Shown in pieces: positions 7,138 through 57,140 of a DNA stretch of 64,000 nt. The notes beneath the pieces were generated by a model, which was given only the letters and a program-made list of their open reading frames with translations, was not told where the DNA came from and did not search any database. Both the position numbers and the translations under genes were made by a program. Location of the stretch: the IMG/VR virus record IMGVR_UViG_3300030108_006260, positions 1-64,000 of that record. One strand, given 5' to 3'. Position 1 is the first letter of the stretch, and the number at the start of each line of letters is the position of its first letter.

Positions 7138-7764
7138 CCACATAGTGGAGCTGTCTTTGACCTCAAACCCATGAGGAGGCTCGCCATATACTTCCATGGC
7201 AACCGTCATAAACTTCTTGAGTTCGTGGCATCTGTTCTTACGTCTTGCGTAGTCATGCTCGGCGTATTCAATTTTTCGGTGAAGGTACTTATTTTCTCCT
7301 TCTCGCCACTCCTCAAAAGTGATGTTTTTTGGTTCGTCGTTAGTAGTCATCCTCAAATTCCAGGCTATGCCCTCTTTGAGTTGCTTCACTACTGTTTCAT
7401 GGAACTCACGAAGAACTTCAGGTACGGCCGATGCCTGCTCCTCTATCTTGTTCTTCAAAGACTCAACCCTATTGATTTCTTCTTGGATACGAGATCCTAG
7501 ACTATCGTGTTCCCCGTTTCTTTCAACAAGGTTTTCCTTCCACTCTTCTCGGAGCTGACTTTCTGTCTTGGCAAGAAAAGCATCAAGGTCTGCGATTGCT
7601 TCCTTGATTTTCTCTTTCTCGAAGTCCTCATTCCAGTTATAAAAAACAATGGGGTCTTCTCTTCCAGCATCCCTCCGGTTCAAACCGATGTGGTGCCAAA
7701 AGTACTCTCTGACAGTGGTGATGCTGCCGTCAGCAACTGCGTGTGAGAATCCGGTCCAGGACAT
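7135..7764 (-). CDS. hypothetical coiled-coil protein
   Basis: Long charged helical ORF. Confidence 0.7.
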   Translation of the reverse strand: MSWTGFSHAVADGSITTVREYFWHHIGLNRRDAGREDPIVFYNWNEDFEKEKIKEAIADLDAFLAKTESQLREEWKENLVERNGEHDSLGSRIQEEINRVESLKNKIEEQASAVPEVLREFHETVVKQLKEGIAWNLRMTTNDEPKNITFEEWREGENKYLHRKIEYAEHDYARRKNRCHELKKFMTVAMEVYGEPPHGFEVKDSSTMW

Positions 7765-8378
7765 TACTTTACTCCGTTAAATCTTACTTTTTCGTGCATC
7801 CAATGGGTGGAAGTCTGCACATGGTTTTTTCTTACGTATTTTGCTACAAGAGAAGAGAACTGATCAAAACTAAATGAAGAGGTAGGTCGAACTACGTACC
7901 CCTCCTTACCACTGATATCAATTTGGTCCAGCATGTCCTTACTAAAAGGACCTTGGTAGAGAACAGGGACAGGAGAAATATCCATCATGGACAGGTAGTC
8001 CAATGTGTCTGACCAAGACAGACACGTATTCGTTTCATCCCATACGGAGAACGCCAGGAATATATGGGGTAGCTCCGTGTACTCGATCGAGTGGACAGCC
8101 GTAAGATTCTCCCCGCAGACTCTCCACCCTGAGGGTATGTTTCCTTGAATACTTGAGTGGAATGCTTTGATCTTTGTCCTGGATTCGTGGGGCCTATAGT
8201 TCAATGAGCGGGCATGTATCCCATCGGAGTAAAGAGAAGTATTCTCCCCATCCATCTTTTCAGTAACAACTACTTCCCCCGAGTCTTCGAGAGGAGTCAG
8301 GTCCGAGAGGATCTTATCGTCGTTAGTAGCCCCAGGACTCCAAGGAAGATGATAGGTTCTAGGGTACTTGATCCACAT
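7764..8378 (-). CDS. RNA ligase family protein (ATP-dependent nucleotidyltransferase)
   Basis: KYPRTYHLPWSPG N-terminus, motif I TEKMDGEN, CGENL, EGYVVR. Confidence 0.85.
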   Translation of the reverse strand: MWIKYPRTYHLPWSPGATNDDKILSDLTPLEDSGEVVVTEKMDGENTSLYSDGIHARSLNYRPHESRTKIKAFHSSIQGNIPSGWRVCGENLTAVHSIEYTELPHIFLAFSVWDETNTCLSWSDTLDYLSMMDISPVPVLYQGPFSKDMLDQIDISGKEGYVVRPTSSFSFDQFSSLVAKYVRKNHVQTSTHWMHEKVRFNGVK

Positions 8379-8637
8379 CTTTACGTGTATTCTTATCGCC
8401 AAAGACAGGCTCTGACACGTGAGCTACGTACCACTCAGTCTCCGTCACAGCCGCAGCCATGAAGAATCCCATGGCTACAGTTGAAACAAACCCGAAGAAC
8501 CAGTACTCGGTGCCCCACAGGTAGAGAAGAGCAGGAATGATCAAGAGGAAGCCGCAAAAGAAGATGACTATCGACCACATGAAAAGAGATACTGTCAGTC
8601 GAACCGCCTTGGCAGCCAATGCGTGTAGGTTGATCAT
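8359..8637 (-). CDS. small membrane protein (2 TM)
   Basis: Two hydrophobic stretches; start moved to MINLHAL. Confidence 0.6.
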   Translation of the reverse strand: MINLHALAAKAVRLTVSLFMWSIVIFFCGFLLIIPALLYLWGTEYWFFGFVSTVAMGFFMAAAVTETEWYVAHVSEPVFGDKNTRKDVDQVP

Positions 8638-15102: not shown

Positions 15103-15120
15103 CTACTATGTGAAGGGTTA
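15103..15120 (-). promoter_or_regulatory. phage promoter-like motif copy
   Basis: ctactatgtgaagggtta. Confidence 0.75.
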
Positions 15121-16834: not shown

Positions 16835-17240
16835 GAAACACGCGGGTCAGACCACCCTCATATTCGTCCTTATGCTCTTCTATGTAGGACTTAACTTCGG
16901 TTGCGGTACCTCTGAATAGGGGCTGTTTCGTTTCCGTATCCCACACATCTTCAACAATGGTAACGCCACGGGATGACCTTGTTCTCGTATCAAAGTTAAA
17001 GACTCCGTACTCTGGCTTAGGGTAGTCTGGGACTTCCATGGTAGGAAGGTCCAGGCCACATAGACGAAAAGCCTCTACAACTTCTTCCCGCTCCAGTATA
17101 GGAATAACTTTTTCACTATTCTCTAGGGGAGCGTAGCCGTGGACGGCTGCCATCACAGAAGCGCCTCCTACAGAGGGGTGGTTAATCTCCCAGAAGAGCC
17201 TAAGCAACGCCAGTCGGATGGTATCTCTATCAATCTTCAT
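16767..17240 (-). CDS. hypothetical protein
   Basis: ORF with ATGA coupling to the upstream gene. Confidence 0.65.
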   Translation of the reverse strand: MKIDRDTIRLALLRLFWEINHPSVGGASVMAAVHGYAPLENSEKVIPILEREEVVEAFRLCGLDLPTMEVPDYPKPEYGVFNFDTRTRSSRGVTIVEDVWDTETKQPLFRGTATEVKSYIEEHKDEYEGGLTRVFLGLKDRGEEEAFFSKYTNARSN

Positions 17241-18394: not shown

Positions 18395-18404
18395 GAGGGG
18401 TGTT

Positions 18405-19145
18405 TTACAGATTCTTGTCCCGGATCTCTTTCTTGGACATCTCTCTAATTTCGTAAGCAACCCTCCACCAGAGAACACGATGCCCGGTCTTGGGATCATC
18501 CTTATAGTGGGAACGACGAGGAGGAGCCCACCACTTATTATAAGTGACGCGGCGCTTCATAAGGACATCGTACTCAGACCCTCCGGGTCCCATGAGAACA
18601 AAGTCGACGCAGTACCAGCGTCCATTAATTTTGTGGTATTCAATAAAGGGCGTCTCTTCCACAATCTTCGGAGACGCCTTCTTTCTCTCCTTCTTTCTTC
18701 GCGCTCTAGCCTTAGGCGTATCGTTGTCACGAAGAATTCCGTAGGGGTCTACGTAATAACCCGTCCACTCGATTCCGTTGCGGAAAGGAAGATTACGTTT
18801 CCCCTTCCACTCGGGCTTGAGCAGAACGAAGTCATTGAGAAGGTGGTCGAAGACGTGCTTTCCCGTGGCAGTACGGGGACTGAGGCCCTCACAGATCTGA
18901 GAAAAGACCTTATCCCAAGGACGACCCACGTTCTTACGAAGAATACCCTTGAGGGGAGTGAAGTATTCGTTCAGGTACTTTCCTCCCCAGTTCTTGACAT
19001 GATGCTTCTTCATCCCTTCCCGCTTGGGAAGACGCTCCATCATGTGTTCATCATTACTTTTCCTTCGAGCAGAGCGGAAGGCATACTTTCCGCCCCCACC
19101 GTAGCGGGGGCGCTCGCACAACTCTTTGTGCAGATACTTTTTCAT
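18405..19145 (-). CDS. basic hypothetical protein, paralog of 44916-45353
   Basis: Shared LCERPR, LP.R..M, PL..(I/F)L.KNVGRPW..V.S.IC. Confidence 0.75.
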   Translation of the reverse strand: MKKYLHKELCERPRYGGGGKYAFRSARRKSNDEHMMERLPKREGMKKHHVKNWGGKYLNEYFTPLKGILRKNVGRPWDKVFSQICEGLSPRTATGKHVFDHLLNDFVLLKPEWKGKRNLPFRNGIEWTGYYVDPYGILRDNDTPKARARRKKERKKASPKIVEETPFIEYHKINGRWYCVDFVLMGPGGSEYDVLMKRRVTYNKWWAPPRRSHYKDDPKTGHRVLWWRVAYEIREMSKKEIRDKNL

Positions 19146-21857: not shown

Positions 21858-22132
21858 TAGGTAGATACCCCTAAAACCGAATAGTTATTCCAATAATCCC
21901 CAACGTACTCATCGTCAGGTATGACTCCTGCTATATACCCTTTGTGAATAGAAATGCCAGTTGACAACTCGATCACGTTGTTTTCTTCGAACACGACACG
22001 AGACAAGAAAACACCCTTGACTTCTTGAGAATCCGTTTCTCTAATCTTAAGTACAATGACCTTGTTTAGCAGAGGCCCATCGTAGGTCAAGGGAGGAAGT
22101 GTGTCAGCTGATTTATCTTGTAATTTTTCCAA
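21857..22132 (-). CDS. small hypothetical protein
   Basis: ORF coupled to neighbours. Confidence 0.55.
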   Translation of the reverse strand: MEKLQDKSADTLPPLTYDGPLLNKVIVLKIRETDSQEVKGVFLSRVVFEENNVIELSTGISIHKGYIAGVIPDDEYVGDYWNNYSVLGVST

Positions 22133-22907
22133 GTTGGTTCCACCTTTTTTGAAGAAGAGTGCAGTACATAGAAGGAGAAAGGTTGAGGGACTCTGTCCCG
22201 TACACCTCTTGTGCTTTGATGAAGAGAGTAGGGGTTCTTATGCTCTCAGGTCGGTTGGGGAACATAGCGACTCCCATGTGAAGTACGTAAGAATCCTGTA
22301 CCATCTGTTTTGCTCTTGTCAGCGCCAGATTGAGGTCTTTGAGGTCTAGTGTGATGAGAGGATCCCCCTTTACATGAGCCACGCCTACCAGGCAACTACT
22401 TTCCATAAAGAGCTTGTACTCGGAAATGTAGGAAACTATAGGAGAAATCCAAACCTGACTCGAACCGCTCACGTAGTCTAATCCTACGAGGTCAGAAAAC
22501 GATTCTACCTTTTGACTAGGGAAGTCCTTCGGTTCAAAGGATCGAAGCCACCAAGTACCCGGATCTTGCCCCTTGAACCTTGTCCTCAGCTGCTCCATTG
22601 TCATTAGAGTAGGAGGAATATCCCTGCTACGAAGGAGACAAGGCGGGAAAGTTAGTGGGTCAGGGGGTCTGTACCCCATAGCCTTTATACCCTTCCTCGC
22701 TAAGTGTACTTCTCCGTACACCATGGATTCTTTGTCTATGGGTAGAGAAGACGATGAATCAAAATCATTTGAGTGGAAGGGTATAACATCCAGGCCCTGC
22801 CTAGTAAATTCTCTGGCTACAGTGTAGCAGTCACGCGTAAGCCACTCGCCTTGTGAGTTCTGTTGAACAAAGACTTTCTTCAGCATGCTACTGTGTTTAC
22901 AGGTCAA
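22113..22907 (-). CDS. R2K-type ATP-grasp family protein (divergent)
   Basis: KVFVQQ...DCYTVAREF..QG.DVIPF; SEYKLFM...LVGVAHVKGD. Confidence 0.6.
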   Translation of the reverse strand: MTCKHSSMLKKVFVQQNSQGEWLTRDCYTVAREFTRQGLDVIPFHSNDFDSSSSLPIDKESMVYGEVHLARKGIKAMGYRPPDPLTFPPCLLRSRDIPPTLMTMEQLRTRFKGQDPGTWWLRSFEPKDFPSQKVESFSDLVGLDYVSGSSQVWISPIVSYISEYKLFMESSCLVGVAHVKGDPLITLDLKDLNLALTRAKQMVQDSYVLHMGVAMFPNRPESIRTPTLFIKAQEVYGTESLNLSPSMYCTLLQKRWNQLGKITR

Positions 22908-35770: not shown

Positions 35771-35995
35771 TCACCATCGTTTGCTGTACTCAAATCCCCC
35801 TGGGACACTACGCCATCCTAGAAGCTCCAAAGTCGCAACAACAGGCTCCGGGACTTCCTCGTCAACCGCCGCCCACACTGCGTCAGGACGGTATGTAATT
35901 GAAGCGTCTTCCGAGAAAGTGTGTACCAGGTCAAGACCCAGCGAGAGCGCCCTCAAGGAACTTACTTCATCCATGTAACGACCAGTGTGCCTCAT
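35771..35995 (-). CDS. small hypothetical protein
   Basis: ORF on the coding strand. Confidence 0.5.
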   Translation of the reverse strand: MRHTGRYMDEVSSLRALSLGLDLVHTFSEDASITYRPDAVWAAVDEEVPEPVVATLELLGWRSVPGGFEYSKRW

Positions 35996-36914
35996 GAAGT
36001 GCCACGCACAGATTCTTGATTTCTTCTGTGTTCGTTTCGTCAGGTAGGCTACTCTTCTTATAGAGGTCCTCTACTAAATCCTCAAGGCGGGAAGCTTCCT
36101 CCATAATCTCCTCGTATGTCTTAGACCCAAGACGAATTTCAATCAATTCTTCGGCATCTGGGCGTTTAGTAATAACTCCTTTGCCTTCCATGATTTCTGC
36201 ACACATTCTCATCAAGCGAATAAGGTGCATTCCGTTCTTAGTGTCGTATCCAAACTTGGATTCAAGCTTGGCCCTTGCTTCGTTTCGGTTTTTCTTCCAT
36301 CCCTGATACTGTTTCCACCTAGTAAGGGCTGAAGCGTACTCCTTTTCCCTCCGGACAGCCGTGGCTACCTCTGGTCCGAAGGTGTACCCCTGGGACTCTA
36401 GATCCTCAATGGCACCCATTGTAGTCTTGTCGATGACCTTACTTCCTGACTCTGGAAGTCCAAAATCAGAACGAAGAGGCTTACTCTTAGGAGGATTGCG
36501 TAGCCACTCGTAGTGTCCTCTCATCTTCTTCAACTGGGAGTGAGCGTATCCCATAAAACGAAATTTAGCCCTCTTTGATAGGAAGATGTCCCGTTTTTCG
36601 ATAAGGACTCTCCCTACAGGGGCGCACACAGTCCAGTCACTCTCTTCTGTATAGAGAAGCTCTACAATGTTGGGGTTACATTCAGACGCTAACTTAAGAA
36701 ACTTCTGTAGCGCAAAAATAGTCCTGTCATGATCATGTCCCCGGTTTACCTGTTCTTCGTGCTGGTCGAAGGAAAAAAACGGGTCTAGGATTACATCCTT
36801 AGGGGGAACGCAGACTCCCTTGAAGTCCACGTCAGAGCCTTCGATGTTGGTACCATAAGCCCTGCTTCCCGTGAGGCATTCGAACACTGTGTTCTTGGGT
36901 ACATCAAATCTCAT
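35967..36914 (-). CDS. Pol-beta superfamily nucleotidyltransferase (RlaP / T4 NrdC.11-like)
   Basis: LTGSRAYGTN...SDVDFKG, CNPNIVELL, GYDTKNGMHLIRL. Confidence 0.9.
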   Translation of the reverse strand: MRFDVPKNTVFECLTGSRAYGTNIEGSDVDFKGVCVPPKDVILDPFFSFDQHEEQVNRGHDHDRTIFALQKFLKLASECNPNIVELLYTEESDWTVCAPVGRVLIEKRDIFLSKRAKFRFMGYAHSQLKKMRGHYEWLRNPPKSKPLRSDFGLPESGSKVIDKTTMGAIEDLESQGYTFGPEVATAVRREKEYASALTRWKQYQGWKKNRNEARAKLESKFGYDTKNGMHLIRLMRMCAEIMEGKGVITKRPDAEELIEIRLGSKTYEEIMEEASRLEDLVEDLYKKSSLPDETNTEEIKNLCVALHEAHWSLHG

Positions 36915-44485: not shown

Positions 44486-44916
44486 TCGCCTTCTTCGATT
44501 TCGTTAGTAAGTGCATACCTCACTAGGTCGTCTGTATTGAAAAAGGACGACTTATTTAGAGACACCGCTTCTGACTGAGTAAATCCTAGACGACTCTCCC
44601 GCATAATGGTGTGGATTACTAAAACGTCTTGGCCCCTTCCTCTGAACTTGCGAAGAAAATCAAGCAAGAATAGATTCATAGCTCCCGTTTTGTTTCCATA
44701 ACAGTAGAAGTAAACAGTTGTTCCTGCATACTGGTCTACGGAGCACTCCCAATTCCAGGGTCCCCACCCTGCAAACATACCCCTGATTCTGTCGATTTCC
44801 AAAGGATTAGCACCGTCACTAAACAGGCTGTATTTCAAGGCTGCATGTCGTTCCAAGAGCCAGGACACTTCTTCGGTGGTCTCACAATTGACGGTAGTAT
44901 GCGTGTAGTTCTGCAC
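44482..44916 (-). CDS. hypothetical protein
   Basis: ORF on the coding strand. Confidence 0.6.
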   Translation of the reverse strand: MQNYTHTTVNCETTEEVSWLLERHAALKYSLFSDGANPLEIDRIRGMFAGWGPWNWECSVDQYAGTTVYFYCYGNKTGAMNLFLLDFLRKFRGRGQDVLVIHTIMRESRLGFTQSEAVSLNKSSFFNTDDLVRYALTNEIEEGE

Positions 44917-45353
44917 TAGTCTTTACATCCTTCCCTAAGGAAGCCCTCGGTGTCCACGAAAAACATTCTGCACTTGGACATGTATACTGAGTTGTAAGGC
45001 TCCCCTTCTAAGTAGACAGGGTGCTCTACCACAAACTGTTTCGTATGTATCCTAACGTGGTCATCGGTTGCTGACCGACTACCCACCACTTTACAGATCT
45101 CACTGTACACATCATTCCAAGGCCGCCCTACGTTTTTCTCCAGAAATCGGTACAAAGGAGAAAATAAATCGTCAGGGTACTTGTAATCCCCCCGTGTAAC
45201 ATGGGGCCTGCGCATACTCTGGCGCAAAGGGAGATCCTCCCAGGATACAGGATTTTTAGACTCTCTTCTGGACTTTCGGTTTCCAGCATTTGACCATCGT
45301 GCACCGTGCACACGTGGACGTTCACACAACTTCTTTGCGATATCTTTACGCAT
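44916..45353 (-). CDS. basic hypothetical protein, paralog of 18405-19145
   Basis: Shared LCERPR and KNVGRPW blocks. Confidence 0.75.
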   Translation of the reverse strand: MRKDIAKKLCERPRVHGARWSNAGNRKSRRESKNPVSWEDLPLRQSMRRPHVTRGDYKYPDDLFSPLYRFLEKNVGRPWNDVYSEICKVVGSRSATDDHVRIHTKQFVVEHPVYLEGEPYNSVYMSKCRMFFVDTEGFLREGCKD

Positions 45354-45354
45354 A

Positions 45355-45411
45355 GCATCTCCAGGGGTTCTGGGGCCGTCTATTCGGCCCTAGATAGTCA
45401 TGTGGAGATGC
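45355..45411 (-). promoter_or_regulatory. structured 5' leader sequestering the SD of the 44916-45353 gene
   Basis: GCATCTCCA/TGGAGATGC 9-bp stem containing GGAG, enclosing a GGGCCG-AATAGA-CGGCCC hairpin. Confidence 0.65.
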
Positions 45412-45451
45412 ATTGTTGTGGATATCCTTTCTGATAATAGATAATAGAATT

Positions 45452-45485
45452 AGAAACGGGGAAGCAGTCTCGCTTCCCCGTTTCT
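45452..45485 (-). terminator. intrinsic terminator closing the tRNA/ncRNA array
   Basis: 14-bp perfect stem agaaacggggaagc / gcttccccgtttct immediately after the last CCA. Confidence 0.75.
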
Positions 45486-45598
45486 GGACCCCTGCGCACG
45501 ATTCGAACGTGCAGCTCCCAGTAGATCAGTCTGGGCTCAGAACACTCAAAATACGCGCGTATCTATTGTGTTCCCTGTTTCCGTTACACCAGCAGGAG
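45485..45598 (-). ncRNA. tRNA-like RNA with expanded anticodon arm
   Basis: CTCCTGC/GCAGGGG acceptor + T + CCA; GCACG-TTCGAAT-CGTGC T arm; GAACAC/GTGTTC stem enclosing 22 nt including palindrome ATACGCGCGTAT; CCCAG/CTGGG variable arm. Confidence 0.75.
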
Positions 45599-45613
45599 AT
45601 TCTTTGTATTTGG

Positions 45614-45790
45614 TCAGAACATAGTCGGCTTTTTATTTCTAGCCTCATCTAGTTCTGTGGACCCCGAGCTGTCTGTGTACTCGATGATACTTCTATGTAC
45701 CTTTTCGTACCTAACGATCTTGATAAGTATATTGATACATACGGTACCAACAATACTTGCTAGTGTGACTTCAATGAGCCATTCGAGCAT
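45614..45790 (-). CDS. small membrane protein (58 aa) inside the RNA array
   Basis: MLEWLIEVTLASIVGTVCINILIKIVRYEK... read by hand. Confidence 0.55.
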   Translation of the reverse strand: MLEWLIEVTLASIVGTVCINILIKIVRYEKVHRSIIEYTDSSGSTELDEARNKKPTMF

Positions 45791-45820
45791 TATTTTTATA
45801 CCTTCAAAACCGAATCAAAT

Positions 45821-45894
45821 TGGTAGCGGAACCGGGATTCGAACCCGGAACCCAAGGTTATGAGCCTTGTGAGATGCCCTTTCTCTATTCCGCA
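45821..45894 (-). tRNA. tRNA-Met(CAT), initiator-like
   Basis: T1:T72 mismatch, CAAGG-CTCATAA-CCTTG anticodon arm, encoded ACCA. Confidence 0.88.
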
Positions 45895-45980
45895 TAAGTT
45901 ACTAGTCCCGAGGGTTTTGTTCCACACGCGCCTAGCAAGCGTGTACTATAGGCTTTAGGAACTCTTTGATAGTGCCCAGG

Positions 45981-46052
45981 AGCGAGAGACCGGGGTCGAA
46001 CCGGCAACGTCTAGCTTGGAAGGCTAGCATTCTGCCATTGAATTACTCTCGC
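45981..46052 (-). tRNA. tRNA-Gly(TCC)
   Basis: GCGAGAG/CTCTCGC acceptor, U73, CTAGC-CTTCCAA-GCTAG anticodon arm. Confidence 0.92.
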
Positions 46053-46057
46053 AAAAA

Positions 46058-46196
46058 AAGAAACCGAGGTAACAATCTGTGTAACATTTATGTTCATTTT
46101 CAAGATGAATGACTTTACCATTTGTCTACATCAGCTGGTAGCTGAAGACAGGATTCGAACCTGCAATTGCGTGTAAGATTGTTTGTAAGGTTTCTT
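46058..46196 (-). ncRNA. Y-RNA-like RNA with circularly permuted tRNA (T arm, closed acceptor, D arm, TGA anticodon arm)
   Basis: Outer stems AAGAAACC/GGTTTCTT and AACAATCT/AGATTGTT; inside GCAGG-TTCGAAT-CCTGT, CTTCAGC-TACCA-GCTGATG, GAC-AAATGGTAAA-GTC, TTCAT-CTTGAAA-ATGAA. Confidence 0.8.
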
Positions 46197-46198
46197 CT

Positions 46199-46334
46199 TG
46201 GCGGAGTTGACTGGAATCGAACCAGATTTGCTTGTAAGAACTGCGAAGTAGTCACTAGGTGACTGAGTAGAAGTTCTGGGAAAAATATGCTTTCTCTAAA
46301 ATGAAAGTGGGGAACCAATCCCCTGTTCAACTCC
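46199..46334 (-). ncRNA. tRNA-like RNA carrying the conserved module in its variable arm
   Basis: GGAGTTGA/TCAACTCC-G-CCA acceptor; GGGGA/TCCCC D-like stem; AGAACT/AGTTCT + AGTCAC/GTGACT module; CTTACAAGCA; CTGG-TTCGATT-CCAG. Confidence 0.75.
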
Positions 46335-46380
46335 TAATTTTGGAAATTTTTACATCTTATCCATGATGGTAATTAATTGC

Positions 46381-46506
46381 CACTAACTGAGTTATAAATC
46401 TGATTTTGATTTGCAGCGCAGGATTTGAACCTGCTACCTTCTGAGTTTCGGTCAGATGCTCTACCAAATGAGCTAGATGCGTGTAAGATTTATTTGTTAG
46501 TTAGTG
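46381..46506 (-). ncRNA. Y-RNA-like RNA enclosing a degenerate tRNA-Phe-like body (loop CCGAAAC)
   Basis: Outer stems CACTAACT/AGTTAGTG and ATAAATCT/AGATTTAT; CTTACACGCA; D, anticodon and T arms present; weak acceptor and no CCA. Confidence 0.75.
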
Positions 46507-46509
46507 ACT

Positions 46510-46639
46510 CGGCGGGGTGTCCTGGAATCGAACCAGATTGCTTGTAAGGATTTGTGGTTGGCCTCGGATGAGGCGAGGGAAAATCCTGTGAAATATCATT
46601 TCCAAATAATGATCGGAGGGCCACCCTCCTATACACCCC
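46510..46639 (-). ncRNA. tRNA-like RNA carrying the conserved module in its variable arm (sister of 46199-46334)
   Basis: GGGGTGT/ACACCCC-G-CCG; GGAGGG/CCCTCC; AGGATTT/AAATCCT + GCCTC/GAGGC; CTTACAAGCA; identical T arm CTGG-TTCGATT-CCAG. Confidence 0.75.
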
Positions 46640-46681
46640 AGGAAGACCTACAAAGTAGGTCATAAACCTAGTATACGAGAT

Positions 46682-46785
46682 TAAAAGCTGAGTTTTTGAT
46701 GTACAATGTAGGAATCGAACCTACTACATTAAGGTTAATAGCCTTACGCTCTATCCAATGAGCTAATTGTGCGTGTAAGCTTTTA
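46682..46785 (-). ncRNA. Y-RNA-like RNA enclosing a tRNA body with ATT anticodon
   Basis: TAAAAGCT/AGCTTTTA outer stem; CTTACACGCA; GCTC/GAGC D arm; TAAGG-CTATTAA-CCTTA; GTAGG-TTCGATT-CCTAC; no CCA. Confidence 0.75.
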
Positions 46786-46807
46786 TGTTTGTTTACTAGG
46801 TGGAGAG

Positions 46808-46835
46808 AGTTTAACACGCTCTCCGAAGTTGTCAA
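46808..46835 (-). promoter_or_regulatory. sigma70-type promoter driving the RNA array
   Basis: TTGACA, 16-nt spacer, extended -10 TGnTAAACT; T-tract upstream; array begins ~20 nt downstream. Confidence 0.75.
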
Positions 46836-46844
46836 GAAAAAAAG

Positions 46845-46997
46845 TTACTGTCCTTGTCTTTTTGTTCCGCAGTACCTTGACGTATGTGACTCCTCTTTGA
46901 GTCTTGTCCAGGTTGTGTTGCGATCTTTCTTTACAAGAGCAATCGCACTCTCAACTGCATTATGTGTGGATGTTTTATTTTCTTTTTCCGAAGTCAT
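46845..46997 (-). CDS. small basic protein (50 aa)
   Basis: MTSEKENKTSTHNAVESAIALVKK... read by hand; follows the ThiF stop. Confidence 0.45.
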   Translation of the reverse strand: MTSEKENKTSTHNAVESAIALVKKDRNTTWTRLKEESHTSRYCGTKRQGQ

Positions 46998-47002
46998 TTC
47001 TT

Positions 47003-47596
47003 TTAGTGAGACATAGCCCCGGCTGGATGAACAGTGTAACCTACCTTGACCCCGTCGTCAACAAATTTTTGAACAGAACGTGCAAGATAAGAAGAAGTGA
47101 TAGCGATAAAGGGGAGAAACTGCCCATCCTCGCAAGTAGCAGCGCCTTCCTGTGGTTCTGGATCGATAACAAAGTTCTCGCTCCAGACGATACGACCGAA
47201 ACTTCCTGCCCCGTCAAGGGCACCGTGAAGACAAGGAATCTCATCCTCACCTTCCTGGGGTCGACAGAAGTTCTGTACGACACTTCGTCCCTCCAGGTTA
47301 TCCAAGCAGTCTACAACAAGGTCAGCGTCGGACAAAAGCTCATAAACATTTTGGTCTGTCAACTTGTGGGGAACCACAGACAGCTTCGTACCAAAGACAA
47401 AGTTCATTGTCTGCTTTAGTCCCTGTACCTTACCTTTTCGTACGGAACCCTTAGAGTGAAACTGGGAGGCCACGTTCTTGGTCTCTACCTTGTCAAAATC
47501 AATAACGGTAAGATCGATGTCTAGGTTACGAATAAACTGAACAAGGTGAGATCCAAGGGCACCCACACCTACAACTACTACTTTCTTCTGAGACAT
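47003..47596 (-). CDS. E1-like ThiF/MoeB adenylating enzyme
   Basis: VVVVGVGALGS, VIDFDKVETKN, DLVVDCLDN; candidate catalytic Cys in GAATCEDG. Confidence 0.88.
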   Translation of the reverse strand: MSQKKVVVVGVGALGSHLVQFIRNLDIDLTVIDFDKVETKNVASQFHSKGSVRKGKVQGLKQTMNFVFGTKLSVVPHKLTDQNVYELLSDADLVVDCLDNLEGRSVVQNFCRPQEGEDEIPCLHGALDGAGSFGRIVWSENFVIDPEPQEGAATCEDGQFLPFIAITSSYLARSVQKFVDDGVKVGYTVHPAGAMSH

Positions 47597-47605
47597 TGTT
47601 CTCCT

Positions 47606-47845
47606 TTACTTAGACATATATGATAGAGCACGACGAGGAAACCTGTCAAAATAGCTAGACCACAACCAAATAGAAGTGATCATTCCAACCGGAACTCCTG
47701 TGTCAGTGTGAGCCCAGGTGTGACCACCGGAGCATACAGCTTCGTTCTGGGTAGTTCCGGCCGGCGTAATCTCCGTCCACCTCGCAAAGGTGCAGTCACC
47801 CGCATCCATAAAAATGAGGTCGCATCCTTTTGTATCTGTCTCCAT
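47606..47845 (-). CDS. small hypothetical protein
   Basis: ATG 5 nt downstream of a promoter motif. Confidence 0.6.
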   Translation of the reverse strand: METDTKGCDLIFMDAGDCTFARWTEITPAGTTQNEAVCSGGHTWAHTDTGVPVGMITSIWLWSSYFDRFPRRALSYMSK

Positions 47846-47850
47846 GTACC

Positions 47851-47868
47851 CTACTATGAGAAGGGTTA
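47851..47868 (-). promoter_or_regulatory. phage promoter-like motif copy
   Basis: ctactatgagaagggtta. Confidence 0.75.
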
Positions 47869-48633
47869 ACCTTTGGTCGACTCCAGGAGTTCTGTTACCT
47901 TTTCTAAGTCCGTTCCCTTGCGGTTAGCGTCCCCTGTTCCCCAGCATACCCTACATACATCGTAAGTCATGGCAGCACCACCAAGTCCTCCCCGCCATGT
48001 AGAAGTGGACCCATAAAGCATGGTACCCATACCAGCACAAGAAGGACAAGGAGTAACAACACCCCTCCATGCTAAAAACTCTCGAACAGTGAGGGTCTTA
48101 TCAAGTTCTACACTATTCCTTAGTTCCCACGCAGAAGTGAGTGGAACAGTAGGATCCTTCAAATTCGAAGGATAAGGGTCTTCATGGTTCCAACGAACAG
48201 ACTCACGGGTCCCTGTCTCATACCACTCAAAGTGGAGCATATGTGTAGAGTGACCCATAATGTCAGGTCTGGCCTTCTCAGGAGGAAGAACGGGCGATAC
48301 ATTTGCCAAATGCATACCTCTACGGAGGTAGGATCCTACTTCTAGTCCTCGAACCGGCTTGACCTCTCCATAGTTCAGAACACCACTAGCACCTTCAACA
48401 AGTACAGCCTGGGTGTAAAGCCAGTGTTCTTCTCCTGGTCCTCCAGTGAAGTCCTCTATGGCTACAACAATTCCATCCTCTGCTGCAAATACCCTGGACT
48501 TTCCCGTGACATAAATGTCTATTCCTTGATGGTAGTAATACGATCTCTTATGACCAAACACACCATATTCTGATGTAAGTCTTTCCTGATTTGTGAGATC
48601 TTCGGATTTAATGGGGAATGTCCACTGAGGCAT
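47866..48633 (-). CDS. M23-family peptidase with C-terminal CxxCxGxG zinc finger
   Basis: HQGIDI (HxxxD), NYGEV, HMLHFE (HxH); CPSCAGMG / CRVCWGTG. Confidence 0.8.
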   Translation of the reverse strand: MPQWTFPIKSEDLTNQERLTSEYGVFGHKRSYYYHQGIDIYVTGKSRVFAAEDGIVVAIEDFTGGPGEEHWLYTQAVLVEGASGVLNYGEVKPVRGLEVGSYLRRGMHLANVSPVLPPEKARPDIMGHSTHMLHFEWYETGTRESVRWNHEDPYPSNLKDPTVPLTSAWELRNSVELDKTLTVREFLAWRGVVTPCPSCAGMGTMLYGSTSTWRGGLGGAAMTYDVCRVCWGTGDANRKGTDLEKVTELLESTKG

Positions 48634-50938: not shown

Positions 50939-51211
50939 CTACTCATTTTCTAAACTTCTTACCGCGTACTCGCAGCGGTTCCACGCCTTATCACCCGTAT
51001 AAAGCGGAGACGTTAGGACAATGGGCGATAGAACACCATCCTGATAAGTCCAAAGAACATCTGTAACAATCACCAACTTATCCTCTAACCACACCTTTTC
51101 ATCTTGACGTGGGATGTCTCCTGAAAAATGTATAGTATTTCCGTTGGGTGTTTTTAGTATGTAAGTCATGCTTTTCCTAAGGAATAGTGGCTGAACAAAC
51201 GAGGGGCCCAT
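50939..51211 (-). CDS. small hypothetical protein
   Basis: ORF on the coding strand. Confidence 0.5.
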   Translation of the reverse strand: MGPSFVQPLFLRKSMTYILKTPNGNTIHFSGDIPRQDEKVWLEDKLVIVTDVLWTYQDGVLSPIVLTSPLYTGDKAWNRCEYAVRSLENE

Positions 51212-52080
51212 TCCTCTAATCTAGGCTCCACACTAGCAAGAAGGCTAATTTGCGTGGACATGTTTGACCCATCAATCTCTTCAGGGTCCATGTTATTGTC
51301 GATATACTTTAGCAGAGTAATACGACGCAAACTAGAGGTGTTACTAATGTATTCTGCTACTTCTGTCTCGGTAGCACACCAAGAATCAGAGTCACGGGAC
51401 TCTCGTAGCCTACGAACTACAGACCTGCAAGCCTGATCAATGAGAAGTGTGTCACTAACTACCCCCAGCTCCAGAATGGACATTCTCACGGAGGCAACAG
51501 AAGGGTACAGGACGTTACCGAAGTAGTCAAGGGCTTCCTTGATCATTTCCTCGTTCGAGGTAGACTCCAGTGAAATATTCGCTATTTTAAACCTCACTCC
51601 GGGAGTTACGGCTCTGTAGAAAGAAGCCTCCTCTTTGTAGCGATGTATGTCTATGGCGTACTTGTCATTATCCAGAATTATCCAATTAGGACTGTATTCT
51701 GTGTGCCACCCCCTAACAGTGTATGATAGAGTCCGCAGCTTATCCAGCCAAGAAAAGTCAGCACTAAAGGGAGTTGATTTCCAGGAGCCTGCGATCTTCC
51801 TGCATACAATGATGTCCGTCTCGGAACAGATCCACCACAACAAGGACCTTCCTAGCGCCTTCTCAATGGAATCAAATGTTTCAATGTCGATCGATGAAGG
51901 TGAGGGTATGCCTGAACCAGGATGACTATGAGCGAAACCAAGAACTTGGTCTCTGTTATCCCATATCTCACTCCACAGGTCTTGAGAATCAGGAAGGTAT
52001 ACGGCAGACCTTCCTTCTGGCAGGTGCCAGTAAATAGGCTTGTTGTCTAGTCCCACAAGGACCCCTGTTTCAATACTCAT
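51166..52080 (-). CDS. JAB/JAMM (MPN+) metalloisopeptidase with C-terminal extension
   Basis: N-terminal IETG (catalytic Glu); FAHSHPGSGIPSPSSID (HxH...SxxD). Confidence 0.85.
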   Translation of the reverse strand: MSIETGVLVGLDNKPIYWHLPEGRSAVYLPDSQDLWSEIWDNRDQVLGFAHSHPGSGIPSPSSIDIETFDSIEKALGRSLLWWICSETDIIVCRKIAGSWKSTPFSADFSWLDKLRTLSYTVRGWHTEYSPNWIILDNDKYAIDIHRYKEEASFYRAVTPGVRFKIANISLESTSNEEMIKEALDYFGNVLYPSVASVRMSILELGVVSDTLLIDQACRSVVRRLRESRDSDSWCATETEVAEYISNTSSLRRITLLKYIDNNMDPEEIDGSNMSTQISLLASVEPRLEEWAPRLFSHYSLGKA

Positions 52081-52384
52081 CTCCGCGCCGACTTTCTTCG
52101 TAAAATTTGTTATTCCTAACAAGTAACAAACGGTCTGCCTCCAGTTCGGCAACAACACCCCACCACCCAATAGACTGAGATCCACTGAGCCCTTTGAGGT
52201 AGTGGACACATCCATAACGGCCATAAGAATGGGTCGATAATGTCCTAATAACTGATAGTATTAGACCGGGGGTAGCTCCCGCCATCTTAAGAGCAGTCGT
52301 TACTGATATGCGCCATGTGTCTCTCTTGGACCCATAAAATATTTCAGATACCCATTCTGCTTGCTTGTCGGACAGACTATTCAT
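52070..52384 (-). CDS. hypothetical protein
   Basis: ORF; start set at MNSLSDKQ. Confidence 0.55.
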   Translation of the reverse strand: MNSLSDKQAEWVSEIFYGSKRDTWRISVTTALKMAGATPGLILSVIRTLSTHSYGRYGCVHYLKGLSGSQSIGWWGVVAELEADRLLLVRNNKFYEESRRGDEY

Positions 52385-55283: not shown

Positions 55284-57140
55284 TCAACTAGCAGTAATAG
55301 CCCAGGCAGGCTTCTTCAGTAGGTCGGTCTGTAGGATCTGGTCAACGAGCATAACCCGAGGGGTACGCGCTCCCTGAGAAGACACGCCAACAGGAGTGGA
55401 GGCAATAAGGTTGTGTAGGGTTCGCGGAACCTGGTACGGATCACTAAACACTGACTGCTCAACCTCAAAGCAAGGAATCTCCAGACTAGCTGCTGTCTCC
55501 GTCACGCAGTGACGCCAAGAACTTCCTACCTTAAGAAGACCAAAAGCCACAGGGTTCAATCCTGACTGTTGAACTGCACGAGGGAAGTTAGCAGCACCCT
55601 CATCACCTACGAAGATGAACAGTGCATCCTCATCTGCGCTAGGAGGGTACTTGGAAAGAAGACGAACGCCAGTAGCGTAATCGGTTCCTCCTCCGGCGCC
55701 ATACCCACGGAAGGCGGCACGTACACCTGCGTGGGAAGCATGCTGGATCTTGATCTCACGTGCTACCGTGTTGAAAACACACACGTGAACTCTGTCCAAT
55801 GGGAATGCCTGAACAAAGTTTTCCAGACATGCCTTTGCTTCATCCAGGGACTGCTGCATAGACCCCGAGATGTCTACGAAGAAGTAGATGCGCATGTTGC
55901 GGGAAACTTCTTCCACCTTCTTCTGTAGGGCAGCGTCTGCGCCTTCCTTCAGAACCTCGACAACTTCTCGTCCCTTTACGTTACGAGCAATGTTACGGGA
56001 ACGTTGGTCTTCTGCTGCACGGACTGCTGAACTCCACCGTTCCTTGATATCCTGTACCTCCAAGAGTCCAAGAGTCTCAAGGGTAGGAGTAGCAATAACA
56101 AGGTCCTTGTCAGACAAACACCCTGACTCAATGGCAGCAGCCATGACTGCGCGGGTAACACCAACCGATACAGGAACACGTGAAGTGATGACCTTGTAGG
56201 AAGGCTTCTCGGAAACAATCTTCTGACAGATCTGTTCCTCCGTTAGATCGTCCCAGGAGTCCTGCTTCTGAATCTGGACACCAAGAGCAACCTCTCGGCG
56301 ACCGTCAGGAGCTTGCTTCTGCTTCCAACGAAGAATCTGAAAGAAGTTTTCCCCTTCGGGCTTGTACCCGATGATCTGAGAGAGTCGAATAACACTCTTA
56401 CGGAAACCAGCCTTGACAAGACCCTGTAGAACAGGAGGATTCTGCTCGCGGAACCGCAACCACTTCTCTACAGCCTTGGGCCAGCGACCCAAGAAAGGGT
56501 TACGATTAGATCGACCAAATCCGAGCTGACGGTTGACCTCTGCAACACCGTCCTGAATGAGGACCTCACGGACACGAAGTAGCATCTTCGGGTTGAAGTC
56601 ACGTCGTTCCGAGCGTAGAAGTAGCATAGCCTCTCCCACGTCACGGTAGTCCTCGTCGTAGAAGAGAACTTCACCGTTCTCTACCTCAGGGTCTCCCTTT
56701 CGGGACTGGCACAGCAAGAAGGCAGCAAGAATAACCTTAAGGTCGCGATGCTCCTGGCCAAACGCATAGGAGGCCCATCGTGCAGCAAACTCATTGTCCA
56801 TTCGCCACAACTCTGCCACCTGGTTATACATCCAGTGAGCAACCTCAGGAAAGATTCCTGCTGGACGGTACTGTGCGACTACACTACGACCTTCCGTGAT
56901 AGATCCATCCTCCCCAAGAACACCTACACGAGTGCGGGTGACACGGCGGCCACTCTTAGAGAGAGCGTAGACAATCTTCTGCCCGTTCTCTTCTTTGTGG
57001 GTTACAGGGGACCAGGAAACGCCGATACGTGTGCGTCCGTCTTGCTTTACCATTCCTGGACGGTTGTGGTAAAGGTGGTCGGTATGACTTAGAAGCGACT
57101 GTAGAATTACCTCAGCCGGTCCCTTACTTTCTTGTTCCAT
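55284..57140 (-). CDS. TROVE/Ro60-like helical domain plus C-terminal vWA domain
   Basis: Clear MIDAS FFVDISGSM, GGGTDY, FVGDE; helical N-region with DNEFAARWASYA, GRWPKAVEKW, IRLSQ..YKP recalling Ro60 blocks (fold inferred). Confidence 0.65.
   Translation of the reverse strand: MEQESKGPAEVILQSLLSHTDHLYHNRPGMVKQDGRTRIGVSWSPVTHKEENGQKIVYALSKSGRRVTRTRVGVLGEDGSITEGRSVVAQYRPAGIFPEVAHWMYNQVAELWRMDNEFAARWASYAFGQEHRDLKVILAAFLLCQSRKGDPEVENGEVLFYDEDYRDVGEAMLLLRSERRDFNPKMLLRVREVLIQDGVAEVNRQLGFGRSNRNPFLGRWPKAVEKWLRFREQNPPVLQGLVKAGFRKSVIRLSQIIGYKPEGENFFQILRWKQKQAPDGRREVALGVQIQKQDSWDDLTEEQICQKIVSEKPSYKVITSRVPVSVGVTRAVMAAAIESGCLSDKDLVIATPTLETLGLLEVQDIKERWSSAVRAAEDQRSRNIARNVKGREVVEVLKEGADAALQKKVEEVSRNMRIYFFVDISGSMQQSLDEAKACLENFVQAFPLDRVHVCVFNTVAREIKIQHASHAGVRAAFRGYGAGGGTDYATGVRLLSKYPPSADEDALFIFVGDEGAANFPRAVQQSGLNPVAFGLLKVGSSWRHCVTETAASLEIPCFEVEQSVFSDPYQVPRTLHNLIASTPVGVSSQGARTPRVMLVDQILQTDLLKKPAWAITAS

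What the first reader, a model, noticed from the sequence alone, without database searches (positions are those of the whole stretch)
46058..46196. Circularly permuted complete tRNA (T arm, acceptor closed by TACCA loop, D arm, UGA anticodon arm)
Seen in sequence, read on the minus strand: GCAGG-TTCGAAT-CCTGT (T arm) comes first. Then CTTCAGC-TACCA-GCTGATG gives the 3' acceptor strand plus ACCA joined directly to the 5' acceptor strand. Then TA-GAC-AAATGGTAAA-GTC (D arm) and TTCAT-CTTGAAA-ATGAA (Ser-UGA-type anticodon loop). All of this is clamped by two 8-bp outer helices. YrlA has the T-acceptor-D order but, as I recall, uses the anticodon position for the Ro-binding stem; here the anticodon arm is retained and the break is in the variable arm. 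It could be a nuclease or synthetase decoy, or a precursor that yields a functional tRNA after cleavage in the ACCA loop and ligation, and the genome encodes an RNA ligase.
Basis: partly seen in the sequence, partly recalled or inferred. Interest (0 to 1): 0.85.

Follow-up and report, generated by a model that had tools for sequence, protein, structure and literature searches.

The report
Phage Y-RNA-like permuted tRNA mimic
The "circularly permuted tRNA" is real: it is one copy of a conserved, previously unannotated family of tRNA-shaped RNAs found in giant phages, encoded near a divergent Ro60-like protein, so it is most likely a new kind of Y RNA (a protein-tethering tRNA mimic) rather than a gene for a working tRNA.

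Summary
On the minus strand at 46198-46056 lies a complete tRNA cloverleaf opened in the variable arm. Its acceptor stem is closed by UACCA and it is clamped by two terminal helices. It is not a one-off: a covariance model finds about 60 distinct copies on 49 contigs (huge phages, Myxococcota-binned contigs, one GenBank phage where it is unannotated). All six helices covary (94% paired, 34/36 pairs compensatory), and the tRNA 15-48 tertiary pair covaries too. Across the family the acceptor loop is often a UUCG or GAAA tetraloop, U33 is present in only 64% of 7-nt "anticodon" loops, and 23 different triplets occur. So the family is a structural mimic, not a decoding tRNA. A 618-aa protein 9 kb upstream on the same strand folds like Ro60 (TROVE ring plus vWA). 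Its homologues lie 0.3-9 kb from the RNA in other genomes. Best reading (about 0.55): a Y RNA of YrlA type with a different permutation point, a retained anticodon arm and a different conserved stem motif. It fails the Rfam YrlA threshold. Rated a new variant of a known kind. A permuted-gene-to-tRNA pathway is unlikely but not excluded.

The parts
46056..46198 (-). Whole permuted tRNA-like RNA (about 143 nt)
   Evidence: Covariance model R1 hit 46055-46198, 118.8 bits. Sequence read.
46189..46198 (-). Terminal helix 1, 5' strand (pairs with 46056-46065)
   Evidence: Sequence. Helix 1 covaries: 8/8 pairs compensatory, 95.5% paired. Predicted de novo by RNAalifold.
46184..46188 (-). Internal loop, 5' side (UUACA)
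   Evidence: Alignment A3/A4.
46176..46183 (-). Helix 2, 5' strand (pairs with 46071-46078)
   Evidence: 8/8 pairs compensatory, 85% paired.
46165..46175 (-). Conserved linker UACACGCAAUU (family motif ACA-N-GCA). Its last base acts as tRNA position 48.
   Evidence: At least 90% conserved. The 15-48 pair is A-U 32, G-C 7 of 43.
46148..46164 (-). T arm with canonical GGUUCGAAUCC
   Evidence: 100% paired.
46129..46147 (-). Closed acceptor stem: 3' strand, UACCA loop, 5' strand
   Evidence: 7/7 pairs compensatory across the family. Loop statistics.
46111..46126 (-). D arm (3-bp stem, loop with A14 and G18 G19)
46093..46109 (-). Anticodon-like hairpin (5 bp, loop CUUGAAA)
   Evidence: 5/5 pairs compensatory. 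Loop not conserved.
46079..46092 (-). A-rich 3' linker
46066..46078 (-). Helix 2 3' strand (46071-46078) plus internal loop ACCUC (46066-46070). Together with the first G of helix 1's 3' strand (46065), this loop carries the family's conserved CUCG block.
   Evidence: CUCG is at least 90% conserved.
46056..46065 (-). Helix 1, 3' strand, followed by a U run and then tRNA-Gly
55284..57140 (-). 618-aa Ro60-like protein (helical TROVE-like region plus vWA with MIDAS); proposed partner
   Evidence: AF2 pLDDT 78. Foldseek top hits 9kop, 9l5y, 1yvr, 2i91 over about 540-560 columns. ESM Atlas nearest clusters are TROVE. MIDAS residues invariant. Linkage.
46199..46334 (-). Sibling element, normal gene order: tRNA-like with 8-bp acceptor, GCCA end and an insertion of roughly 60 nt in the variable arm, carrying the same linker motif
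46511..46639 (-). Second normal-order sibling element
46808..46835 (-). Sigma-70-like promoter candidate for the RNA cluster (weak evidence)
   Evidence: TTGACA-16-TAAACT. The count is not above shuffles.
45452..45485 (-). Strong terminator-like hairpin at the end of the cluster
   Evidence: 15-bp stem.
7764..8402 (-). RNA ligase (context: phage RNA-repair kit)
   Evidence: PF09414, E 7e-30.
35967..36914 (-). RlaP nucleotidyltransferase (RNA-ligase-associated; context)
   Evidence: PF10127, E 3.8e-21.

Best explanation
It is a phage-encoded Y RNA-like molecule. A complete tRNA-shaped body (T arm, closed acceptor stem, D arm, anticodon-like hairpin) is mounted on a terminal stem formed by its own 5' and 3' ends.

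Proposed mechanism:
1. It is made as part of the tRNA-cluster transcript.
2. It is set free by the enzymes that trim the neighbouring tRNA-like gene and tRNA-Gly.
3. The terminal stem, with its conserved internal loop (CUCG) and linker (ACA-N-GCA), is the docking site for the phage's Ro60-like ring protein.
4. The tRNA-shaped body recruits a tRNA-recognising enzyme (an exonuclease or repair enzyme) to that protein. It may also gate the protein's access to RNA.
5. The likely purpose is tRNA quality control or repair while the host attacks tRNAs.

Shown: the structure and its conservation, the tRNA-like tertiary signature, the fold of the protein, and co-occurrence with conserved proximity.

Inferred: binding, processing and purpose.

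Because the acceptor stem is 7 bp and the loop reads U-ACCA, this copy may also be cut by RNase P to expose a CCA end, as reported for M. smegmatis YrlA. That too is inferred.
For: Structure:
- The six-helix structure is supported by covariation on 18 sequences (90% paired against 64.5% shuffled and 31-48% slid).
- It holds on 48 sequences (94% paired, 34/36 compensatory).
- RNAalifold predicts it de novo.
- tRNA elbow nucleotides are conserved and the 15-48 Levitt pair covaries.

Not a decoding tRNA:
- Acceptor loops include UUCG and GAAA tetraloops and inserted hairpins. Only 17/48 start with NCCA.
- U33 is present in 21/33 seven-nt loops, and 23 different triplets occur.

The protein:
- The 618-aa protein's best structural matches are Ro60/TROVE over about 540-560 columns, E 1e-8 to 4e-6.
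- ESM Atlas nearest clusters are TROVE.
- MIDAS residues are intact.

Linkage:
- The RNA is found in 34/64 Ro-centred viral loci. All 52 hits of at least 50 bits are on the gene's strand, mostly 2.4-6.6 kb downstream.
- The same holds in MAG contigs and in GenBank KX853510.
- 14 of the 17 contigs found by RNA motif also carry the gene. A fifteenth, L105, has a 26%-identical homologue ending about 290 nt upstream of the RNA.

Precedent:
- YrlA RNAs lie within 4 kb of Ro60 on the same strand, including in phages (PMC4201824).
- Phage Ro60 binds adjacent Y-like RNAs (PMC12135203).
- Some jumbo phages carry TROVE with a tRNA-like partner (PMC7824862).
Against: - No binding or expression data exist.
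- The Ro-like assignment rests on fold and language-model similarity only. Pfam TROVE and PDB sequence searches see just the vWA domain. TM-scores are low (0.33-0.43). There is an extra N-terminal beta-domain.
- The Ro-like gene sits inside a co-oriented tRNA island (921 tRNAs in 64 loci, 97% same strand). Same-strand proximity may therefore reflect island synteny within one phage lineage rather than function.
- In the window the distance is 9.1 kb, beyond the 4 kb used for YrlA.
- The canonical GNCGAA/CGAA Ro-binding motif is absent.
- Rfam YrlA gives no hit in the window and 25-28 bits (threshold 69) in relatives.
- L137 has the RNA with no Ro-like gene in the stretch held, which reaches about 5.5-6.3 kb either side of the RNAs.
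Confidence: 0.55

Rival explanations
1. Stand-alone tRNA decoy. The closed-acceptor tRNA mimic soaks up or misdirects a host tRNA-targeting defence nuclease or another tRNA-binding protein, independently of the Ro-like protein.
For: - The anticodon-like hairpin is kept (7-nt loop in 33/48, purine at position 37 in 32/33) while the triplet is hypervariable. That could reflect an arms race.
- The phage carries an RNA-repair kit (RNA ligase, RlaP, cREC). This is the context in which tRNA cleavage by hosts matters (PMC7824862).
Against: - The most conserved parts are the elbow and the terminal stem or linker motifs, not the anticodon loop.
- U33 is missing in a third of the 7-nt loops, and loop length varies.
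- A decoy does not explain the conserved terminal stem with its CUCG loop, or the persistent pairing with the Ro-like gene.
Confidence: 0.15
2. Two-piece tRNA-like RNA. RNase P cuts between the ACCA and G1, with no ligation. This leaves two strands held together by the acceptor stem and the terminal helices, with a free CCA end that could be aminoacylated (a split class-II-like tRNA).
For: - The acceptor stem is 7 bp family-wide.
- 17/48 loops begin with NCCA followed by a spacer that looks like an inter-tRNA spacer.
- M. smegmatis YrlA, with a 7-bp stem, is cut by RNase P and receives CCA in vivo (PMC4201824).
- ARAGORN accepts the re-permuted core as tRNA-Ser(tga).
Against: - Many orthologues have UUCG, GAAA or 2-nt loops with no CCA.
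- In the window copy the spacing is U-A-CCA, one base too many for N73-CCA. The loop can instead be an ACC triloop on an 8-bp stem.
- Discriminator U and the U-U mismatch are not typical of tRNA-Ser (from my own knowledge).
- The loop triplet is not conserved.
- This reading is compatible with, not exclusive of, the Y RNA reading.
Confidence: 0.12
3. True permuted tRNA gene of the Cyanidioschyzon type. The termini are joined by the phage RNA ligase (circular intermediate), the variable-arm extension is excised, and the acceptor loop is opened, giving a canonical tRNA-Ser(UGA).
For: - The gene order is exactly 3' half then 5' half.
- Normal-order siblings carry an insertion at the same position, paralleling the intron/permutation correspondence known in C. 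merolae (the parallel is from my own knowledge).
- An RNA ligase is encoded.
Against: - There is no bulge-helix-bulge motif. The terminal region is 8-10 bp, a 5x5 internal loop, then 8 bp.
- No splicing endonuclease was seen among the window ORFs screened.
- Tetraloop-closed acceptors, non-canonical anticodon loops and unconserved triplets occur in orthologues.
- The 'removed' part is among the most conserved.
Confidence: 0.04
4. Non-functional debris of tRNA-array rearrangement, or a permuted (two-piece) tmRNA.
For: - It lies in a tRNA array.
- Rfam gives weak tmRNA_permuted similarity in a relative (31 bits against 47).
Against: - Compensatory changes occur in 34/36 pairs across 48 copies on 49 contigs.
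- ARAGORN finds no tmRNA.
- There is no G3:U70 pair and no room for a tag reading frame or pseudoknots.
Confidence: 0.01

Closest known systems
YrlA-type bacterial and phage Y RNAs (Rfam RF02553; Chen et al. 2014, PMC4201824; Wang et al. 2018, bioRxiv 10.1101/312249)
   Same: - A tRNA-derived module in the order T arm, closed acceptor stem-loop, D arm.
- Conserved elbow nucleotides and a covarying 15-48 pair.
- Termini pair into a stem.
- Encoded near, and co-oriented with, a Ro60-type gene.
- Present in phages.
- Proposed origin from tandem tRNAs fits the NCCA-plus-spacer loops seen here.
   Different: - The opening is in the variable arm, not the anticodon stem.
- A full anticodon-like hairpin is retained, whereas YrlA lacks the anticodon loop.
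- There is no V hairpin upstream of T.
- There is no 5' GNCGAA motif. Instead there are a conserved CUCG loop on the 3' strand and an ACA-N-GCA linker.
- The acceptor stem is 7 bp throughout.
- It fails the Rfam gathering score.
- The partner protein is a divergent TROVE-like family that Pfam does not recognise.
Ro60-Yrl RNP of Thermus phage phiLo (PMC12135203; PDB 9kop, 9l5y)
   Same: - A phage-encoded Ro60-fold protein with adjacent small structured RNAs.
- The phiLo protein is the best structural match of the window's 618-aa protein.
   Different: - phiLo Yrl RNAs are described as stem-bulge-stem RNAs with a CGAA motif upstream of the gene, not complete tRNA cloverleaves.
- Sequence identity of the proteins is about 18%.
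Circularly permuted tRNA genes of Cyanidioschyzon merolae and some archaea (from my own knowledge; reviewed in PMC3400036)
   Same: - The 3' half is encoded upstream of the 5' half.
- Acceptor strands are joined by a short intervening sequence.
- Sibling genes carry an insertion at the permutation point.
   Different: - Those yield canonical tRNAs through a BHB-dependent endonuclease and ligase.
- Here there is no BHB, decoding features are not conserved, and acceptor stems are often tetraloop-capped.
Two-piece (permuted) tmRNA
   Same: T arm, 3' acceptor and CCA lie upstream of the 5' acceptor strand. Weak Rfam tmRNA_permuted similarity in a relative.
   Different: No tag frame, no pseudoknots and no G3:U70. 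It has D and anticodon arms. ARAGORN is negative.

Membership tests
YrlA (Y RNA-like, RF02553) | tRNA-like module: T arm, closed acceptor stem-loop, D arm, with elbow nucleotides conserved | tested here: met
YrlA (Y RNA-like, RF02553) | Termini leave through the anticodon-stem position; no anticodon loop; optional V hairpin 5' of T (PMC4201824; 10.1101/312249) | tested here: not met
   Termini leave at the variable-arm position. A 5-bp hairpin with a mostly 7-nt loop follows A26.
YrlA (Y RNA-like, RF02553) | Conserved GNCGAAN0-1G motif near the 5' end | tested here: not met
   The family consensus has no such motif. The conserved blocks are ACA-N-GCA and 3'-side CUCG.
YrlA (Y RNA-like, RF02553) | Reaches Rfam gathering score (69 bits) | tested here: not met
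   No hit in window 44500-48000 at E<=10. 25-28 bits in L028 and L041, covering model positions 30-81 only.
YrlA (Y RNA-like, RF02553) | Encoded close to, and on the same strand as, a Ro60 orthologue | tested here: inconclusive
   Same strand. 9.1 kb in the window, 2.4-6.6 kb typical, 0.3 kb in L105. But the protein is only Ro60-like by fold, and both lie in a co-oriented tRNA island.
YrlA (Y RNA-like, RF02553) | Bound by Ro60/Rsr in vivo | not testable with these tools
   Needs RIP or EMSA.
Ro60/TROVE proteins (for the 618-aa protein) | Alpha-helical (HEAT-like) TROVE region followed by a vWA domain with MIDAS | tested here: met
   Foldseek matches to 9kop, 9l5y, 1yvr and 2i91 over about 540-560 columns. 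DxSxS, T and D are invariant. TM-scores are only 0.33-0.43, and ring closure was not verified.
Ro60/TROVE proteins (for the 618-aa protein) | Matches Pfam TROVE (PF05731) or Ro60 sequences | tested here: not met
   Only vWA families are hit. The ESM Atlas nearest clusters are TROVE at 0.86, which counts as a lead only.
Permuted tRNA gene (C. merolae type) | 3' half upstream of the 5' half of one tRNA | tested here: met
Permuted tRNA gene (C. merolae type) | Bulge-helix-bulge motif formed by leader and trailer | tested here: not met
   The terminal region is helix, 5x5 loop, helix.
Permuted tRNA gene (C. merolae type) | Product is a canonical decoding tRNA (U33, 7-nt loop, conserved anticodon among orthologues) | tested here: not met
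Two-piece tmRNA | Tag reading frame, pseudoknots, G3:U70 alanine identity | tested here: not met

The most novel reading that the evidence does not exclude
The permuted RNAs and their normal-order siblings are two topologies of one design, in which a Ro-docking stem is grafted onto the variable arm of an otherwise complete tRNA. Copies with an NCCA-spacer loop (including this one) are opened by RNase P. This gives charged or chargeable split tRNAs that deliver the Ro-like protein to the translation or tRNA-repair machinery. In the extreme version, they are ligated into working tRNAs, which would be the first permuted tRNA genes outside eukaryotic algae and archaea.
Probability: 0.1. Interest if true: 0.9.

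Novelty: new variant of a known kind. Interest (0 to 1): 0.66.

Why it matters
Y RNAs that mimic tRNA are known, but only in one topology, open at the anticodon stem with no anticodon loop. This family shows a second, independent way of turning a tRNA into a Ro-type tether. It is open at the variable arm, has a full anticodon arm, and uses a different docking motif.

It comes with a divergent Ro60-like protein family that standard domain models miss, yet that family has more than 1,400 homologues, many on contigs of 100-600 kb. The coexistence of permuted and normal-order versions, and of NCCA-spacer and tetraloop acceptor closures, gives a natural series for testing the proposed origin of Y RNAs from tandem tRNAs.

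It also flags unannotated RNA genes in huge-phage tRNA islands, which are probably tied to the contest over tRNA cleavage and repair.

Tried and rejected
- **DNA similarity to sequenced phages.** Only ordinary tRNAs matched.
- **Strict junction pattern** (T loop, 11 nt, ACCA, 7 nt, TAG) in viral contigs. It found only the source contig with a complementary acceptor; the others were ordinary tandem tRNAs.
- **Rfam** at gathering and at E<=10. Nothing on the element itself.
- **The ACA-N-GC motif as a general tRNA leader or promoter.** Rejected: it precedes only 51 of 921 tRNAs, and it lies inside the RNA between helix 2 and the T arm.
- **Hammerhead-like CUGAUG in the acceptor.** Rejected by eye, since it is not conserved in L028.
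- **Ro60 by sequence.** Pfam, PDB phmmer and a profile search gave the vWA domain only.
- **MoxR-vWA chaperone pair.** No AAA+ partner was found among the neighbouring ORFs.
- **ARAGORN with the outer helices kept as a variable arm.** No call, because the arm is too long.
- **Promoter scan.** The count is not above shuffles, so the operon model is only tentative.

Full report
**1. The observation**

In 5'-to-3' order the parts are:
- helix 1, 5' strand (46198-46189);
- internal loop UUACA;
- helix 2, 5' strand (46183-46176);
- linker UACACGCAAUU;
- T arm with a canonical GGUUCGAAUCC (46164-46148);
- 3' acceptor strand (46147-46141), UACCA (46140-46136), 5' acceptor strand (46135-46129);
- U8 A9, then a 3-bp D arm with a GG loop (46126-46111);
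- A26, then a 5-bp hairpin with loop CUUGAAA (46109-46093);
- a 14-nt A-rich linker;
- helix 2, 3' strand (46078-46071);
- internal loop ACCUC;
- helix 1, 3' strand (46065-46056).

Three refinements. The acceptor stem has a U-U mismatch at 6:67. It can alternatively be drawn as 8 bp with an ACC triloop. Helix 1 extends to 10 bp, so the element exactly fills the space between the CCA of the upstream tRNA-like gene and G1 of tRNA-Gly.

The sequence folds better than shuffles (z = -3.5). ARAGORN calls the re-permuted sequence tRNA-Ser(tga) when the terminal helices are removed, and calls nothing when they are kept as a variable arm. Neither ARAGORN nor Rfam sees the element in its native order.

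**2. It is one member of a conserved family**

The window is part of a 240-kb viral contig. It comes from a phage with rIIA/rIIB that is remote from sequenced phages.

A relative of 377 kb (L028) has the same architecture at the syntenic place, with different stem sequences that still pair. A recurring linker motif before T arms, ACA-N-GCA, let me fish further loci from viral contigs. A script then picked out 18 clear members.

On a MAFFT alignment of these 18, an explicit six-helix structure is 90% paired, against 64.5% in shuffles and 31-48% with slid partners. 31 of 36 pairs change on both sides. RNAalifold predicts the same six helices de novo.

A covariance model built from them separates members (73-128 bits) from everything else (63 bits or less, mostly tandem tRNA junctions). 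It finds exactly one member in the window, at 118.8 bits. Searching loci fetched around a protein (section 4) added many more. On 48 distinct copies, 94% of cells pair and 34/36 pairs are compensatory (this alignment is model-fitted, one search is not).

In all I count 49 contigs with a member at 73 bits or more. These are 40 IMG/VR contigs, many of 200-620 kb; 8 contigs binned in bacterial MAGs; and GenBank KX853510.1 (Virus Rctr197k), where the RNA is unannotated.

**3. What the family conserves, and what it does not**

Conserved in at least 90% of members:
- the T loop;
- D-loop A14 and G18 G19;
- C25 and A26;
- the ACA-N-GCA linker;
- a CUCG block where the 3' internal loop meets helix 1.

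U8 is present in 38/43 members. The tRNA tertiary Levitt pair 15-48 covaries (A-U 32, G-C 7 of 43), with the last linker base acting as position 48. So the RNA very probably folds into a tRNA L-shape.

By contrast, the features needed for decoding or charging are not conserved:
- The acceptor-closing loop starts with N-CCA in 17/48 members. Elsewhere it is a tetraloop (UUCG, GAAA and others), a 2-nt loop, or carries an inserted hairpin.
- The anticodon-like loop is 7 nt in 33/48.
- U33 is present in only 21 of those 33.
- 23 different triplets occur.

The family as a whole is therefore a structural tRNA mimic with a closed acceptor end. The window copy happens to look more tRNA-like than most.

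**4. The protein context**

The window encodes a 618-aa protein at 55284-57140, on the same strand and 9.1 kb upstream. Pfam sees only a C-terminal vWA domain in it.
- An AlphaFold model built from 25 homologues has mean pLDDT 78.
- Its four best PDB matches, and the only ones spanning about 540-560 columns, are TROVE/Ro60 structures: 9kop and 9l5y (Ro60 of Thermus phage phiLo), and 1yvr and 2i91 (Xenopus Ro60). E-values run from 1e-8 to 4e-6.
- The ESM Atlas independently places residues 1-413 next to TROVE clusters.
- The MIDAS residues are invariant.
- Sequence-level searches do not reach Ro60, TM-scores are low, and there is an extra N-terminal beta-domain. I therefore call it Ro60-like, not Ro60.

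Homologues number more than 1,400, many on contigs of 100-600 kb.

Linkage between the gene and the RNA:
- In 64 viral loci centred on this gene, the RNA model hits 34 loci.
- All 52 hits of at least 50 bits are on the gene's strand, mostly 2.4-6.6 kb downstream.
- Of the 17 contigs found through the RNA motif alone, 14 also carry the gene.
- A fifteenth, L105, has a distant homologue (hhalign 99.8%, 26% identity) that ends about 290 nt upstream of the RNA.

An important caveat applies. The gene lies inside a co-oriented tRNA island (921 tRNAs in 64 loci, 97% same strand). Part of the proximity and all of the strand bias could therefore be lineage synteny.

**5. Comparison with what is known**

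YrlA RNAs are encoded within 4 kb of Ro60 on the same strand in more than 250 bacteria and 22 phages. They contain T, closed acceptor and D modules that mimic tRNA (PMC4201824). Their crystal structure shows a tRNA L-shape without a free CCA end and without an anticodon loop (bioRxiv 10.1101/312249). M. smegmatis YrlA, which has a 7-bp acceptor stem, is cut by RNase P and receives CCA (PMC4201824). A phage Ro60 binds adjacent Y-like RNAs and can engage host PNPase (PMC12135203). Some jumbo phages are noted to carry a TROVE protein with a tRNA-like partner, alongside RNA ligases and RlaP (PMC7824862).

The present family works like this kind of RNA but is not a member of YrlA as defined:
- It is opened at the variable arm rather than the anticodon stem.
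- It keeps the anticodon arm.
- It lacks the GNCGAA motif.
- It does not reach the Rfam threshold.

I found no paper describing it.

**6. Mechanism**

Most likely (about 0.55), the RNA is released from the tRNA-cluster transcript by tRNA-processing enzymes. Its terminal stem (CUCG loop, ACA-N-GCA linker) docks the Ro60-like protein. The tRNA-shaped body recruits a tRNA-recognising enzyme, or gates the protein. This would serve tRNA surveillance or repair during infection.

The window also encodes an RNA ligase (7764-8402), RlaP (35967-36914) and a cyclic-phosphate-processing cREC protein (15118-15720).

Structure, conservation, the protein's fold and co-occurrence are shown. Binding, processing and purpose are inferred.

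Rivals:
- a Ro-independent decoy for tRNA-targeting defences (0.15);
- a two-piece RNA with a free CCA end after RNase P cleavage (0.12; compatible with the main reading);
- a true permuted tRNA gene resolved by ligation (0.04);
- debris or tmRNA (0.01; refuted by covariation and anatomy).

**7. Siblings**

The same linker motif and stem design occur in normal-order tRNA-like genes with an insertion of about 50-60 nt in the variable arm. There are 92 of these against 67 permuted ones in about 90 loci. Two lie just upstream in the window (46334-46199 and 46639-46511). The permuted RNA is thus literally a circular permutation of a co-resident design, which strengthens the view that the variable-arm stem is a functional module.

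**8. Verdict**

This is a new variant of a known kind (a Y RNA/YrlA-like tRNA mimic), paired with a divergent Ro60-like protein family, in huge phages whose contigs are repeatedly binned with Myxococcota.

Noticed in passing
window 46199-46334 (-) and 46511-46639 (-): Two normal-order tRNA-like genes. They have 5-6-bp D stems, odd anticodon loops (8-nt AUUUUAGA; AUUUGGA) and an insertion of about 50-60 nt in the variable arm, carrying the same ACA-N-GCA linker and an ACUC-type internal loop. ARAGORN and Rfam miss them. 92 such elements occur in about 90 related loci, and 31/92 have a CCA tail.
   Followed up: partly
window 46410-46482 (-); L028:7868-7943: A tRNA-like gene (Rfam tRNA 48.9 bits; missed by ARAGORN). 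It has only a 5-bp acceptor stem, is preceded by the CUUACACGC motif, and has loop CCGAAAC (C33). The L028 counterpart has a perfect 5-bp stem and a different anticodon.
   Followed up: partly
window 46700-46772 (-): A tRNA with anticodon AUU (called Asn), an unusual A34 anticodon. It is also preceded by CUUACACGC.
   Followed up: no
window 45486-45598 (-): Another tRNA-like fold: 7-bp acceptor-like stem, T arm GCACG-UUCGAAU-CGUGC, no D stem, two internal hairpins. It lies just before the strong terminator. Its folding energy is not above shuffles (z = -1.1).
   Followed up: partly
L041:8566-8658: A bacterial-type small SRP RNA (57.7 bits, threshold 40) is encoded in a 497-kb phage contig immediately after its two permuted RNAs.
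   Followed up: no
L211-L236 (genome contigs): 21 of the 26 genome assemblies holding the Ro-like gene are labelled Myxococcota lineages (Sandaracinaceae, Kofleriaceae, Polyangia, Sorangium and others), and three more are labelled only Deltaproteobacteria. This suggests the host group. One is a cultured isolate, Paraliomyxa miuraensis SMH-27-4 (799-kb contig, L229), where no RNA copy was found within 10 kb.
   Followed up: partly
L237:21541-21681 (KX853510.1, Virus Rctr197k): An unannotated member of the RNA family (78 bits) in a GenBank phage record. The Ro-like gene there is only a misc_feature 'similar to conserved hypothetical protein'. Synteny with the window holds (Ro-like, ThiF-like, tRNA cluster with Gly-tcc and Met).
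   Followed up: yes
window 7764-8402, 15118-15720, 35967-36914, 2458-3093 (all -): An RNA-repair kit: RNA ligase (PF09414) beside the Leu/Leu/Met tRNA cluster, a cREC cyclic-phosphate-processing receiver domain, RlaP, and a weak 3'-5' exoribonuclease-like match.
   Followed up: partly
window 47003-47596 and 51166-52224 (-): A ThiF/E1-like protein directly upstream of the RNA cluster, and a JAB-domain protein a few kb away. The ThiF-cluster synteny is kept in L057 and KX853510.
   Followed up: no
3' flanks of family members (for example window 46049-46055; L054, L062, L071, L077): Many copies are followed within a few bases by a run of 4-7 U. This is reminiscent of the 3' oligo-U of eukaryotic Y RNAs, or it may be a weak terminator. 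It was not analysed statistically.
   Followed up: no
window 17237-18499 and 22113-22907 (-): Two R2K-clade ATP-grasp proteins.
   Followed up: no
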